In this document: piece after piece, positions 15,475 to 23,910 of the stretch | How positions within the stretch are numbered: position 1 is the first letter of the stretch | Layout: the number at the start of each line of letters is the position of its first letter | Assembly (NCBI RefSeq): GCF_001194135.2 | Contig: NC_068987.1 | Location: forward strand, 72,833,754 to 72,897,753 | DNA: 64,000 nucleotides | Reading direction: 5' to 3' | From: Octopus bimaculoides | Taxonomy: Eukaryota | Notes under the pieces: model-generated | What the model saw: the letters and a program-made list of their open reading frames with translations, nothing else | Databases searched by the model: none | Told to the model about the DNA's origin: nothing | Made by a program: the position numbers and the translations under genes

Positions 15475-15506
<32 letters not shown>

Positions 15507-15614
15507 CACACACATATACATACAGACAGACAGACATATGTATTCATACATACGTATGTATATATATGTGTGTGTATATATATAGAAGTACACACACACA
15601 CACACACACACACC

Positions 15615-15665
<51 letters not shown>

Positions 15666-15692
15666 GTTATCCGAATTTTATAGTATTAAGTA

Positions 15693-15802
15693 TTCATCAC
15701 AACTGATCTTACTAATCGTCGGTTTCGCATAAAGAATACAATGGAGCGTTAGGTAATAATCCGATTATATAATTTTATGCTCATCAGAGATAGCCGATAT
15801 GG
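15693..15802 (-). ncRNA. Type I hammerhead ribozyme motif (inverted copy)
   Basis: On the - strand: CTGATGA (15787-15781); stem II gcataaa/tttatgc; GAAAC (15726-15722); GTA (15712-15710); stem I atct/agat. Confidence 0.75.
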
Positions 15803-16762
15803 AAGGGAAGATGGCGACTGCTCTCTATTGTCGGAGGTGGATTAATACAACCGGTCAGCGGTTGCTGTGAAAAAATGGTGAAACGAAAAAGGGTTCAGGG
15901 GATTGGTCCCTTGGTGTGAAACTGGCAAGAGTTATCTTGAAGTAGGGAAAGTGTGTATTATTAATACGGTGTCCCTGCGGGGATGGAGGTGTGAGATATA
16001 GGGTGTGTGGTATGTGTAGCAACGTCGTATGTGTAATTTTTTCCTGGGGTGTAGATATATATAGCTGTGCTCGTAGTCTTTTTTCTTTCTGTAAAGGATA
16101 AAGTCGTGTTTTTTTTTATATTAGCGTGCGGTGTGTAATGTGTGTAGGGGATGCGAGTCTGTGTATATGTGGGGGTAAGATTTGTGGGAATGGTTATGTG
16201 TTGGGGGGGGGGGCAGATAGTTATTTGCTGAGTGTCCGCCTTATAAGGTTGTTCGTGTGTATAAATGGGTGCATTGGTGTGTGTTTTGGTCAAACTCTTT
16301 TTGCCGGGCTCAAGGGCATTGGTGGAAGGTGGTTTACGGAAGGTTGAGGCAAGAGACCTGTGGTTGCAGTCATGTTGGAGTTAACATAATGTACTTCCTT
16401 TCATGCGGGCAAGGATTAAACATCTCACTTCTGTTATTCAGGTAAACATCCAGGCGTTAAGTACCTTTTAAAATCACTCTCTTCTCAGAGCCACGCATAA
16501 TTATACATATGACACCGTTAATTATACATATGACACCGCTATACATATCACACACCCCATCCCCGCAAGGGTACCATATATAATACACACTTGCCCCACT
16601 TCAAGATACCTCTTGCCAGCTTCACAGCATATCCAACCAAGGGACATAACTCCTAACCCAATCCCTTGAACCCTTTTTCGTTTCACCATTTGTTTCACAG
16701 CAGCCGCTGATCGGTTATGTTAATCCACCTCCGACAATAGAGAGCAGTCGCCTTCTTCCCTT

Positions 16763-16868
16763 CCATATCGGCTATCTCTGATGAGCGTAAAGTTATATAA
16801 TCGGATTGTTACCTAACACTCCATTGTATTCTTTACGTGAAACTGATTGGTAAGATCAGCCGTGATGG
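16763..16868 (+). ncRNA. Type I hammerhead ribozyme motif
   Basis: CTGATGA at 16778-16784; stem II gcgtaaag/ctttacgt; GAAAC at 16839-16843; GTA triplet at 16850-16852; stem I ggct-atct pairing agat-c-agcc. Confidence 0.75.
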
Positions 16869-17776
16869 ATATTTAATACTATAAAATTCGAATAGTATAC
16901 CCACTCTACTGACAGATATATGAGTGTATCTTCTCCCTAACTTATGGTCTTAGACAACTCACGCATGTATATATGTGTGTGTGGGTGTATTTATATATAT
17001 AGCATGGCTGCAGCCTCAAGGCTAAAGCATATAAAAGAATAAAAGGATATATATGGCACATATATTTATAATACTGGATGATAGATAGTAACAAAGACAT
17101 GGGGATTGAACAAGGAAAGTGTGAGGTAATGCTAAGAAAAAAAATGTGACGTTCTAAGAGGCAACGGGGGAAAGAGATTAGATGGGGAGAAAGAAGGGTT
17201 GAAAGTAAGAAGAGATGGGAAGAAAATTGTAAGAATAAATGATGGGGGAATAGGTAAGAGGATGGGTTAGTCGAAAGACGGATAAATAGACAGAGTGAAA
17301 ACGAAAAGGTAGGAGTGGATGACACAAAAATAAAAGGTGCAGTAAAAGAAAGAAGAAAAGGAGAAAAAAAGACGGACATGTGAGTAGTGTAAATTGAAGA
17401 TTGAAAGCAGGGTAGGGAAGTCACATGCAGGCACATACATGCGCTTACACACGTTCAGCTGTTAAATATGTACCGATTAAAATATTCAAGATGACTATAC
17501 TGCCGATAGAATAATTCTGTAAGTTGTGTGAAATACGCTTCTAGATTCACACATTCAAAAACCAATTAAGACATAAATAATTTAAATGATTAGCTTTCAT
17601 ATACAAAATTTAGAATATAATTAAAGATATAAAGTTAATTAATGCAGCTGAAGACGATTAGAAATCTGTGGAATGAAAACTGATTCGATTGTGTTGAAAT
17701 ATCATTAGTACACAATGTCAATAAATAAAGGGACTTATGAGGATATATTATGGCTTTTAGCTTTTATTTATTTAAG

Positions 17777-19390
17777 TTATTCTCTGATCTCGGGTCCAAT
17801 GAAAATGCTTGCTTTCAGTTTTGCGTCACTTTTCTCTGCACCAAATTTTACTCTTAGGTACTGGAAGCCACAACCATCGTATGTCATTACTTTTATGAAG
17901 TTTTTCATGCGGCGAGTTTGATGTGAAGGGGTGGAAGGAAGAGCTTTTTGCGGGTCTACCAGTGGCATATGAAGCACACTGTACCGACTAGCTATGCGCT
18001 CATCTCTTTTAGGCCAGTCTTTTGCTATGTAATGACTGCTGTCATGGTGGCTGTTCCAAACACACAAGAAGCACATATTTTTGGTATATCCAAGCTGCAA
18101 TCCTAGGAAGAGGGAAATCACCTTTAAATTACCAGAAATATTCCACTTGTGAACTGAGTAATTAACTCCTTTCAGAAATAGTTCCATCGATTCATAAGTG
18201 TCTTCCATACCGACAACATGACCCACAGGAATGGAAGGTTTTTCATTACCATTACGTGACAACACAGCTTTGAGGCTAACCTTACTCGAGTCTATAAATC
18301 ATCTCCATTCGTTAACCTCATGCACGTGTCCTAGTTTTTGCATGAATGTATTAACGTCAGTACAGAAACAAGCATACTTTCTTGCTTGAAAAAGACAAAT
18401 AAGCCTTTATGACGAGAACGGAAAATGGAAATGTTCGTACCTTGCTGTAGAAGATTCCGTTGTTGTAGTTTGGATCCCAAAACTTCTGCCCTCTCCTTCG
18501 ACAATGCTAGGTCTCTTACTAAATCGTTCAAATCTTCTTGATTAAATTAGCCTGGCTCATTTTTCTTAGAATCATCTACGTCCTCTTCGTCGATAGGAGA
18601 GTCAGACGGTTCATCGCGCGATGTGTCAAGATTTTCAAGTGAAGCATGTGAGAGAGGAACTGGGACAGGGTTCTCGAAGTCATGTGAGACCGGTTTTAGA
18701 GCCGACTTACAATCTGCATACGCCATTTTTGCTTTGGTCTTCTTTGACAAACCACTAATATTAGTCATGCAAAAGTAACAACCAGAGACATGATTGGTTG
18801 GCTGTAAAAGGCATTCCCTTCCGTTTTCCATTCAGCCACTGTATAAGCCCTGAGTAACACACGGTATAGCATATATGAGGTGCCCACCTCTTGTCTTGGT
18901 CCCCAACTTTACACCCGAAATATTTATTTATCGGCAATTTTTAATTTGGGGCAATGTTCCTCCGTTGGTCACGCGGAGCAAATTTTCCACTGACATAACA
19001 AAAGTTGTCTCGATGATTCACACAGCCTCTCCTATTCATAATCTAACACAATGCACACAGTAAAAACAGTAATCATACAGAGCGAGAGATACCAATAACA
19101 AACTGACGTATTTGGCATTGCACACAATACATCAGCGCCATCTATTGCTAAACTAAATAATGAACTTTCTCATCGCTTGTTTTATTGCTGTTATTTTTAA
19201 ATTTTGAATTAAGACAAATTTTATAATACGGCCGATATCTAATTGAAAGTATGGTTATAATCTTTCGCATGCGCATAACTCAAAATCCGGACATGCTAGA
19301 ACAATTCTGAGTGCGGATTCGGAATCAGCATCTTCGATTTAATCTGAAACACTCGCTTTTACCCCAGTAGCAAAACTTTGTTGTCCAATG
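17777..19390 (-). mobile_element. Chapaev3-like (CMC) DNA transposon, 3'-truncated
   Basis: ATG at 19039 gives MNRRGCVNHRDNFCYV...YFGCKVGDQDKRWAPHIC, then QPTNHVSGCYFC and PSIPVGH...LKVISLFLGLQLGYTKNMCFLCVW. The terminus reads CATTGG with adjacent TAA at 19391. Confidence 0.8.
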
Positions 19391-23552: not shown

Positions 23553-23838
23553 TCTCATACTTGAAGAAATAATTAAAGGATATAGTTCTTTGAAAAGTGG
23601 TTGATGATTAGAAAGGCATGCAAAAAACAATGGCAACAACAAAGAATTGCAGTTTTCTTTATTGTTGTTTATACCAGATGACAAAGCTAAAATGCAGGGT
23701 TAAAACAAATCTGTTCAACCCATGCTAGCATTGGAAAAAATGTATGTTTTTGTAATATTTTCTGCAATAGGAATTTTAACAGAAGCTCCACTATTGAATA
23801 TCACAGTTTCATACTAAAATAAGTACCATATGCATTCT

Positions 23839-23910
23839 TCAGACGACTGTTGCAGAACATTCGACTGTCCATGTTTCCTTTTCATTGCATGGTATCAAAA
23901 ATTGACAGAC
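23839..23910 (-). CDS. EFCAB7: EFCAB7 last coding exon
   Basis: cttctttcAG acceptor. VCQFLIPCNEKETWTVECSATVV* matches VCQHVMPLNERQEW; an AATAAA lies on the - strand at 23658-23663. Confidence 0.9.
   Translation of the reverse strand, partial: VCQFLIPCNEKETWTVECSATVV

What the first reader, a model, noticed from the sequence alone, without database searches (positions are those of the whole stretch)
15691..16872. Penelope-like remnant capped at both ends by outward-facing hammerhead ribozymes
Seen: two ~315-bp inverted arms flank a Penelope GIY-YIG C-terminus. The outer end of each arm carries a complete type I hammerhead core: stem I, CUGAUGA, a 7-8 bp stem II with a ~38-nt loop, GAAAC, and a GUA cleavage triplet. 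Established: Penelope-like elements often carry inverted pseudo-LTRs with hammerhead motifs, and metazoan retrozymes use such motifs to process transcripts. Inference: this is a cephalopod PLE family with an unusually long stem II loop. Read-through transcription from either side would give a self-cleaving end and a long dsRNA hairpin. The ORF track gives no hint of it.
Basis: partly seen in the sequence, partly recalled or inferred. Interest (0 to 1): 0.85.

Follow-up and report, generated by a model that had tools for sequence, protein, structure and literature searches.

The report
Fossil octopus retroelement with twin hammerheads
This is an old, decaying inverted pair of truncated copies of a mobile element in the Octopus bimaculoides genome, each ending in an intact-looking hammerhead ribozyme motif; that layout is already known for Penelope-like retroelements, and the claimed endonuclease-coding remnant is not there.

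Summary
The window is Octopus bimaculoides chromosome CM046607.1. The inverted repeat is real and larger than reported: window 15663-16899, two arms of about 380 bp around a unique centre of about 480 bp.

Each outer end carries a complete type I hammerhead motif pointing outward, with H17 at A16852 (+ strand) and 15710 (- strand). A descriptor scan finds only these two strict motifs in 64 kb. Simulated sequence gives 0.0125 relaxed hits per window and 0 of 400 with stem II of at least 7 bp. The "38-nt loop" is an extended, roughly 22-bp imperfect helix II. Helix III is weak. Rfam reports no hammerhead.

No GIY-YIG or reverse-transcriptase remnant exists. Pfam, a regex, tblastn with a reference PLE ORF, and a 64-protein PLE profile were all negative.

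The same insertion sits at the orthologous site in O. vulgaris and O. sinensis with the centre deleted, so it predates their split. It evolves at about the flank rate.

Best reading: a head-to-head pair of 5'-truncated copies of a hammerhead-bearing, probably non-autonomous, PLE-type retroelement. It looks like a fossil, not a working device. No other family copies could be retrieved, so the PLE link is circumstantial.

The parts
15663..16040 (-). Left arm: the 3'-terminal ~380 nt of an element copy whose sense strand is the - strand. Its 3' end is at 15663.
   Evidence: Inverted repeats I1, I2, I4, I7 and I8. BLAST gives 83.7% over 356 nt. Alignments.
15694..15802 (-). Left hammerhead motif. 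CUGAUGA runs 15787->15781, stem II is GCAUAAA/UUUAUGC, then GAAAC. Loop 3 carries a 3-nt insertion. H17 = A15710.
   Evidence: Descriptor hit; alignment A1; pair counts. The fold is not distinguishable from shuffled sequence, z = -1.35.
16041..16519 (.). Unique centre of about 480 nt, G/T-rich on the + strand and C/A-rich on the - strand. Probably the further 5' part of the longer (- strand) copy. No coding signal.
   Evidence: No other copy in the window or in the fetched loci. No Pfam, tblastn or HMM signal. The C/A-rich composition continues that of the sense-oriented arms (read from the sequence).
16498..16538 (+). A 21-bp tandem duplication (2 copies) at the inner edge of the right arm.
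   Evidence: TRF and the repeat finder family D4.
16520..16899 (+). Right arm: the 3'-terminal ~380 nt of the second copy, in + strand sense. Its 3' end is at about 16899.
   Evidence: Conserved at the orthologous site in O. vulgaris (L007 113709-113995) and O. sinensis (L008 85133-85419).
16763..16868 (+). Right hammerhead motif. Stem I 16763-16777 / 16853-16868, core CUGAUGA 16778-16784, helix II 16785-16838, GAAA 16839-16842, stem III 16842-16851, H17 = A16852.
   Evidence: Descriptor hit. RNA fold z = -5.7 for the 121-nt stretch 16755-16875 that contains the motif. Stems I and II fold in every copy. 92.8% of cells are paired, against 32-44% in slid controls.
16869..16899 (+). A 31-nt 3' extension beyond stem I, present in both arms. 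It is mirrored at 15663-15693.
   Evidence: Inverted repeat I2; alignments.
15626..15665 (.). (AT)20 microsatellite directly abutting the left end, a possible insertion target.
   Evidence: TRF. The same (TA)n abuts the element in O. vulgaris and O. sinensis. A (TA)n or AT-rich target is reported for PLEs.

Best explanation
This is a dead, head-to-head pair of 5'-truncated copies of one hammerhead-bearing retroelement of the Penelope-like / retrozyme kind.

INFERRED steps. The RNA of the source element carried a type I hammerhead about 47 nt from its 3' end. A PLE-type enzyme nicked both DNA strands at an AT-rich site and primed reverse transcription from the same RNA 3' region on each strand. 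That left two copies with their 3' ends, and so their hammerheads, pointing outward. One copy is about 380 nt and the other about 857 nt. The element itself is probably non-autonomous. In the source element the hammerhead would have processed multimeric transcripts, most likely as a dimer because helix III is weak.

SHOWN steps. The inverted anatomy, the two complete motifs, the absence of any RT or endonuclease coding sequence, the presence of the insertion at the orthologous site in O. vulgaris and O. sinensis, and decay at about the flank rate. In the O. vulgaris/O. sinensis lineage the palindrome centre and the left hammerhead core were deleted. At this locus nothing indicates a present function.
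For: Anatomy. The arms, the outward-facing motifs and the shared 31-nt 3' extension are.

Significance. Two motifs are observed against 0.0125 expected; 0 of 400 simulations hit with stem II >=7 bp.

Structure. It is kept in all four full copies, with 92.8% of cells paired against 32-44% in slid controls.

Age. The orthologous element is at L007 113631-113995 and L008 85055-85419. The Octopus species split 13-33 My ago (PMC13282606).

Neutral decay. All 11 hammerhead differences between the arms are transitions, and several fall at CpG sites (read from the alignment). Between species the hammerhead is 94.3% identical against 92.4-92.9% for the flanks.

Published PLE behaviour. Inverted 5'-truncated copies and a microsatellite bias. 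Dual hammerheads on opposite strands 100-700 bp apart, with helix II of 7-8 bp. PAc cleaves and extends both DNA strands at AT-rich DNA. The left end abuts (AT)20.
Against: No other family member could be retrieved, so homology of the arms to any RT/EN-encoding PLE is unproven. No PLE ORF lies in the roughly 290 kb of Octopus DNA examined. Rfam gives no hammerhead hit. Only one compensatory pair exists, and it consists of two CpG transitions, so there is no statistical covariation. Helix I is long (13 bp) and helix II very long, unlike the published PLE minimal hammerhead with a helix I of 4-5 bp. The right flank is not a microsatellite, and no target-site duplication can be read.
Confidence: 0.6

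Rival explanations
1. One reading: a remnant of an autonomous Penelope-like element, with the C-terminal part of its GIY-YIG endonuclease ORF lying between the two pseudo-LTR arms.
For: The layout and the hammerheads fit PLE pseudo-LTRs. In Poseidon_Ac the stop codon lies only about 126 nt upstream of the unit junction that carries the hammerhead.
Against: No GIY-YIG or RT signal in any frame: Pfam at E<=10; the families seen on real PLE proteins, PF00078, PF28514 and PF26215, were not among the hits), regex, tblastn with the PAc ORF, best E = 1, and a 64-protein PLE HMM with negative scores. The arms are only about 8-16% diverged, so a coding remnant should still be visible.
Confidence: 0.07
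2. A single hammerhead-bearing copy (retrozyme monomer, SINE-like element or solo pseudo-LTR) inserted first. A later local inverted duplication of host DNA then turned it into a palindrome, unrelated to the transposition mechanism.
For: The arms differ by about 8-16% and by three indels, so they need not date from one event. Palindromes are unstable and do rearrange here, as the centre deletion in O. vulgaris and O. sinensis shows.
Against: Both arms end at the same element terminus, and the symmetry stops exactly there. A random segmental inversion would usually carry flanking DNA with it. The structure already existed before the species split.
Confidence: 0.15
3. A foldback or MITE-type DNA transposon with long terminal inverted repeats. 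The hammerhead-like motif is either accidental or was captured from a retroelement.
For: The terminal inverted repeats run to the very ends. A TA or TATA target duplication cannot be excluded, because the left flank is (TA)n and the right flank starts TA(G/T)A. There is no retroelement ORF.
Against: The full motif is very unlikely by chance, and it sits in the position and orientation typical of PLE termini. The centre is asymmetric and C/A-rich on one strand, like a longer copy continuing. No transposase remnant was found in the element.
Confidence: 0.12
4. An exapted functional locus. The hairpin or the ribozyme is used by the host, for example as a dsRNA source for small RNAs or ADAR editing, or as a processing site for a transcript running out of the upstream CABIT-domain gene.
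For: The right-arm hammerhead core is intact in three Octopus species. The element lies 4.2 kb downstream of the last coding exon of LOC106869748 on the same strand.
Against: Conservation equals that of the flanks, 94.3% against 92.4-92.9%. O. vulgaris and O. sinensis have lost the hairpin and the left core. Stem III varies by indels. No expression data are available.
Confidence: 0.04

Closest known systems
Hammerhead motifs in the pseudo-LTRs of Penelope-like elements (Cervera & De la Pena 2014, PMC4209133; Craig et al. 2021, PMC8557442; PAc study, PMC11167929)
   Same: A type I hammerhead close to the element's 3' end in the terminal repeats. A large helix II stem of 7-8 bp. A weak helix III. 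Pairs of motifs on opposite strands a few hundred bp apart. Inverted 5'-truncated copies. An AT-rich or microsatellite insertion site.
   Different: No RT/GIY-YIG ORF at this locus. Helix I is long (13 bp with a bulge and an internal loop) rather than 4-5 bp. There is no unpaired base between A9 and 10.1. Helix II continues into a 54-nt rod of about 22 bp. Stem III has 2-3 bp plus a 4-6-nt loop rather than the minimal form. Homology to an ORF-bearing PLE is not shown.
Metazoan non-LTR retrozymes (Cervera & De la Pena 2020, PMC7229834; Li et al. 2026 preprint, 10.64898/2026.07.22.740005)
   Same: A non-coding, low-GC element of a few hundred nt carrying a type I hammerhead with a short helix III. 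These elements are thought to be non-autonomous PLE derivatives.
   Different: Retrozymes are head-to-tail tandem arrays of 170-400-bp units that yield circular RNAs. Here there is no tandem array, only two copies on opposite strands.
Schistosoma Sm-alpha and amphibian satellite 2 hammerheads (as described in PMC4209133 and PMC7229834)
   Same: Genomic, repeat-borne type I hammerheads whose weak helix III makes them work as dimers.
   Different: Those have compact helices (I about 6 bp, II about 4 bp) with conserved loop 1-loop 2 contacts. The octopus motif has neither compact helices nor recognisable loop-loop partners.

Membership tests
Hammerhead ribozyme, type I | Conserved core: C3 U4 G5 A6 N7 G8 A9, G12 A13 A14, the A15.1-U16.1 pair, and H17 not G. 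| tested here: met
   All core positions are present and invariant in both arms and in the O. vulgaris and O. sinensis right-arm orthologues. The cleavage triplet is GUA.
Hammerhead ribozyme, type I | Three helices around the core, with helix I open-ended. | tested here: met
   Stem I has 13 bp and stem II has 7-8 bp plus an extension. 92.8% of cells are paired, against 32-44% in slid controls. Stem III has only 2-3 bp and ViennaRNA never predicts it.
Hammerhead ribozyme, type I | The G10.1-C11.1 closing pair of helix II. | tested here: met
   G-C in three of four copies and G-U in the O. bimaculoides right arm (pair 23-76).
Hammerhead ribozyme, type I | A match to the curated covariance models (Rfam hammerhead families). 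| tested here: not met
   No hammerhead hit at gathering score or at E<=10. This is weak evidence, because a compact, textbook-shaped motif at L007 72213-72251 was also missed, and the 54-nt helix II is heavily penalised.
Hammerhead ribozyme, type I | Covariation supporting the helices. | tested here: inconclusive
   Only four near-identical sequences are available. There is one compensatory G-C to A-U change, made of two CpG transitions, and the shuffles match it.
Hammerhead ribozyme, type I | Self-cleavage 3' of H17. | not testable with these tools
   This needs in vitro transcription or mapping of RNA ends.
Penelope-like element (EN+) | A single ORF with a TERT-like RT and a GIY-YIG endonuclease. 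| tested here: not met
   Searches are all negative for the element. There is also no PLE ORF in the roughly 290 kb of Octopus DNA in hand.
Penelope-like element (EN+) | Terminal repeats (pseudo-LTRs), direct or inverted, formed by 5'-truncated copies and carrying a hammerhead. | tested here: met
   The copies are head-to-head, their 3' ends face outward, and a hammerhead lies 47 nt from each end. This matches the descriptions.
Penelope-like element (EN+) | Insertion into a microsatellite or AT-rich target, with an optional 30-40-bp tail at one end. | tested here: inconclusive
   (AT)20 abuts the left end in all three species, but the right flank is unique sequence. Both arms carry the same 31-nt extension, so there is no one-sided tail.
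Penelope-like element (EN+) | Sequence homology of the arms to the 3' end of an ORF-bearing PLE in the same genome. | not testable with these tools
   No whole-genome nucleotide search of Octopus is available. The protein route gave no Octopus PLE among the 120 hits listed.
Non-LTR retrozyme | A head-to-tail tandem array of 170-400-bp units, each with a type I hammerhead. | tested here: not met
   There are no tandem copies. TRF and self-BLAST show only the inverted pair.
TIR DNA transposon / MITE | Terminal inverted repeats flanked by a target-site duplication. | tested here: inconclusive
   The inverted termini are present. A TA-type duplication cannot be told apart from the (TA)n flank.

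The most novel reading that the evidence does not exclude
Octopus may harbour a distinct hammerhead lineage whose helix II has grown into a rod of about 22 bp and 54 nt and whose helix I has 13 bp. Such a ribozyme could fold and cleave without the usual loop 1-loop 2 contact. The palindromic insertions it generates could be recurrent sources of long dsRNA, for small RNAs or ADAR editing, in cephalopod transcripts.
Probability: 0.08. Interest if true: 0.6.

Novelty: new member of a known kind. Interest (0 to 1): 0.27.

Why it matters
It adds a cephalopod example to the known link between type I hammerheads and Penelope-like or retrozyme elements. It also shows a motif variant, with a very long helix II and a long helix I, that the curated Rfam models do not pick up, so such motifs may be under-counted in mollusc genomes. 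The three-species comparison gives a dated natural history. The insertion predates the Octopus split 13-33 My ago and has decayed at about the flank rate. One lineage then lost the palindrome centre, consistent with the known instability of long inverted repeats. None of this changes current understanding, and the locus itself looks functionless.

Tried and rejected
- **Rfam.** Gathering-score and E<=10 scans gave no hammerhead, only microRNA-model hits on the (AC)n/(AT)n microsatellite at 15500-15680, which are low-complexity artefacts. A control on a compact motif in L007 was also missed.
- **Other family copies by protein search.** A concatenated six-frame translation of both arms gave no hit among 5,766 candidates.
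- **Other family copies by DNA pattern.** An exact 19-mer scan of JGI metagenome contigs returned four loci that match the 19-mer only, so they are chance hits.
- **Other family copies in fetched Octopus DNA.** No further copies in the 64-kb window, or in 118 kb of O. vulgaris, 90 kb of O. sinensis and 22 kb of Argonauta hians.
- **Empty site in Argonauta.** The flanks do not align, so there is no pre-insertion allele.
- **Octopus PLE proteins.** A search with the Poseidon_Ac RT-EN region found 4,622 hits, but the 120 listed are reptile, insect, spider, lamprey or unnamed. No cephalopod PLE locus could therefore be fetched.
- **Exact look-ups.** The window ORF 10248-11450 and P0001 were not on record.
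- **SINE origin.** No tRNA-like gene was found between 15000 and 17500.
- **Selection on the hammerhead.** Rejected: its divergence equals that of the flanks.
- **Supplements.** The Octopus vulgaris repeat paper has a single 6,437-character docx supplement, which I did not open. The Naiad paper has none held.

Full report
**Where the window comes from.** The window is 36.5% G+C, rich in microsatellites, and holds 11 runs of N. A 400-aa ORF at 10248-11450 matches CABIT-domain proteins of Octopus. Its 90% cluster contains O. bimaculoides XP_014771124.1. The genomic locus of that protein is L006, from GCA_001194135.2 chromosome CM046607.1. L006 is 100% identical to the window, and window position 1 equals L006 position 5168. 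By L006 coordinates, the element is CM046607.1:72,849,416-72,850,652. It lies 4.2 kb downstream of the last coding exon of LOC106869748.

**The inverted repeat.** It is real and larger than reported. The repeat finder gives a 157-nt core at 92% complementarity (15719-15875 / 16690-16846). Extensions run out to 15663 and 16899 and in to about 16040 and 16520. BLAST aligns 356 nt at 83.7%, and MAFFT shows three indels. The centre, about 16041-16519, is unique. It is G/T-rich on the + strand, so it is C/A-rich on the - strand, like the sense orientation of the arms. I therefore read the - strand copy as the longer one, about 857 nt, and the + strand copy as about 380 nt. This is an inference from composition only.

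**The hammerhead motifs.** The right-arm motif, on the + strand, reads as follows:
- Stem I: 16763-16777 pairs with 16853-16868. That is 13 bp with one bulged C and a 2x2 internal loop.
- Core: CUGAUGA at 16778-16784.
- Helix II: 16785-16838.
- GAAA: 16839-16842.
- Stem III: ACU[GAUU]GGU.
- H17: A16852, then stem I resumes.

The left arm carries the same motif on the - strand, with C3 at 15787 and H17 at 15710.

My own RNAmotif-style descriptor requires CUGANGA, stem II of at least 4 bp flush with GAAA, A15.1-U16.1 plus at least one further pair, H17 not G, and stem I of at least 4 bp. It finds exactly these two motifs in the window. 400 first-order Markov simulations gave 0.0125 hits per window, and none when stem II had to be at least 7 bp. 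A still looser descriptor (stem I >=3 bp, stem III >=1 bp) adds one weak, probably chance, hit at 23792-23842.

It folds into AUAUAAU/AUUGUAU, GGA/UCC and UGUU/AACA. Helix II is therefore an imperfect rod of about 22 bp.

ViennaRNA predicts stems I and II in every copy but never stem III. The minimum-energy fold instead pairs the CUGAU box with loop 3. A weak helix III is the published norm for metazoan type I hammerheads, which work as dimers (PMC4209133; PMC7229834).

Rfam gives no hammerhead hit at gathering score or at E<=10. I give this little weight. Rfam also missed a compact, textbook-shaped motif that I found at L007 72213-72251.

**The coding claim.** No GIY-YIG or RT remnant is present. 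Four tests were negative:
- Pfam on all six frames at E<=10. None of the families seen on real PLE proteins (PF00078, PF28514, PF26215) was reported.
- A GIY-YIG/YIGxT regex over the whole window.
- tblastn with the Poseidon_Ac ORF, taken from File S1 of PMC11167929. The best E-value was 1.0 in a 1.6-kb database, with random-looking alignments.
- hmmsearch --max with a profile of 64 PLE proteins, which gave negative scores.

The arms are only about 8-16% diverged from each other, so an ORF present at insertion should still be detectable. Within about 800 nt of its 3' end the inserted sequence was non-coding. That points to a non-autonomous element or a very long 3' UTR.

**Orthologues and age.** The orthologous sites are O. 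vulgaris L007 113631-113995 and O. sinensis L008 85055-85419. Both carry the same insertion, abutting the same (TA)n on the left and the same unique sequence (GACCCACTC...) on the right. Only about 365 nt remain there: the outer 78-80 nt of the left arm joined to about 287 nt of the right arm. The junction is AATGGA|TACC, which corresponds to window positions of about 15745 and 16607. So the palindrome centre and the left hammerhead core were deleted in that lineage. The insertion therefore predates the split between O. bimaculoides and O. vulgaris, put at 13-33 My (PMC13282606). The flanks do not align in Argonauta, so there is no empty-site allele.

**Selection.** All 11 differences between the two O. 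bimaculoides hammerheads are transitions. Several fall at CpG sites, as read from the alignment. The single compensatory change in helix II, G-C to A-U, is made of two such CpG transitions. Divergence between the arms is 10% in the hammerhead, 8% upstream of it and 13% in the tail. Between species the hammerhead is 94.3% identical, against 92.4-92.9% for 1-kb flanks. With four sequences, the shuffles reproduce the covariation measures. The motif is inherited from the source element and is drifting at about the flank rate at this locus.

**Mechanism.** Three published observations frame the reading:
- Insertions of PLE clades (shown for Naiads and described as shared with canonical PLEs) often carry an inverted 5'-truncated copy next to the main copy. 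Microsatellite targeting, such as (TA)n, is also reported (PMC8557442).
- Pairs of hammerheads on opposite strands 100-700 bp apart were seen in Schistosoma (PMC4209133).
- The purified Anolis PLE protein cleaves and extends both DNA strands at AT-rich DNA (PMC11167929).

A head-to-head pair with both 3' ends outward, next to (AT)20, fits that behaviour. This step is inferred, not shown.

A read-through transcript would fold into a hairpin of about 380 bp, predicted at -670 kcal/mol. That is far more stable than the roughly -33 kcal/mol hammerhead fold. The two motifs are also on opposite strands, so they cannot dimerise in one transcript.

**What could not be done.** I could not retrieve any other family member. 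I could not retrieve any Octopus PLE either. The PLE assignment therefore rests on architecture and on the published association, not on homology.

**Verdict.** The feature is real. It is a new octopus member of a known kind, with an unusually long helix II. It looks like a fossil, and the coding-remnant part of the finding is wrong.

Noticed in passing
L007 72213-72251 (+), O. vulgaris, inside the range of the CABIT gene model: A compact, textbook-shaped type I hammerhead motif: UUUAA-CUGAUGA-GGCAA[CGGAAA]UUGCU-GAAA-CUG[UCGU]CAG-UA-UUAAG. Stem I has 5 bp, stem II 5 bp and stem III 4 bp. The descriptor did not find it in O. sinensis (L008), and Rfam missed it at E<=10.
   Followed up: partly
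L007 113631-113995 and L008 85055-85419, against window 15745-16607: O. vulgaris and O. sinensis lack about 860 nt of the palindrome: the centre, the inner arms and the left hammerhead core. The junction shows a GA microhomology. This is a natural example of deletion within a long inverted repeat.
   Followed up: yes
window 15500-15680: Rfam E-value hits to mir-297, mir-466, mir-3149, mir-1277 and similar families all fall on the (TACA)n/(AC)n/(AT)n microsatellite. They are low-complexity artefacts, far below gathering scores.
   Followed up: yes
window 6569-7030 (-); similar N-terminal-type ORF at L005 20123-20674 (+): An ORF containing '...IGSTTYFKQQYAAHLHSFRYDKHSKSTTLASHIHHLKN...'. From memory it resembles the GIY-YIG-like tail of a repeat protein widespread in invertebrates. 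Pfam gave no hit for the window ORF at E<=0.01 (the L005 ORF was not scanned). It lies 9 kb from the element and is not part of it.
   Followed up: partly
window 17777-18265 (-): A 162-aa ORF 0.9 kb to the right of the element ('...GYTKNMCFLCVWNSHHDSSHYIAKDWPKRDE...'). It looks transposon-derived, but that is from memory. Pfam gave no hit.
   Followed up: partly
window 41137-42324 (-): A reverse-transcriptase-like fragment ('GVKQGDIPAPSLFAIYF...') interrupted by a 960-N assembly gap. It is probably a LINE remnant. The 68-aa piece gave no Pfam hit at E<=0.01.
   Followed up: partly
window 23792-23842 (-): A weak hit to the relaxed hammerhead descriptor (CUGAAGA, stem II 4 bp, stem III 1 bp). 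It is of the quality expected by chance.
   Followed up: no
protein P0061: A protein 61% identical to the Anolis Penelope-like RT-EN is deposited as 'hypothetical protein, partial [Escherichia coli]' on a 2.6-kb contig. This is almost certainly eukaryotic contamination in a bacterial assembly.
   Followed up: no
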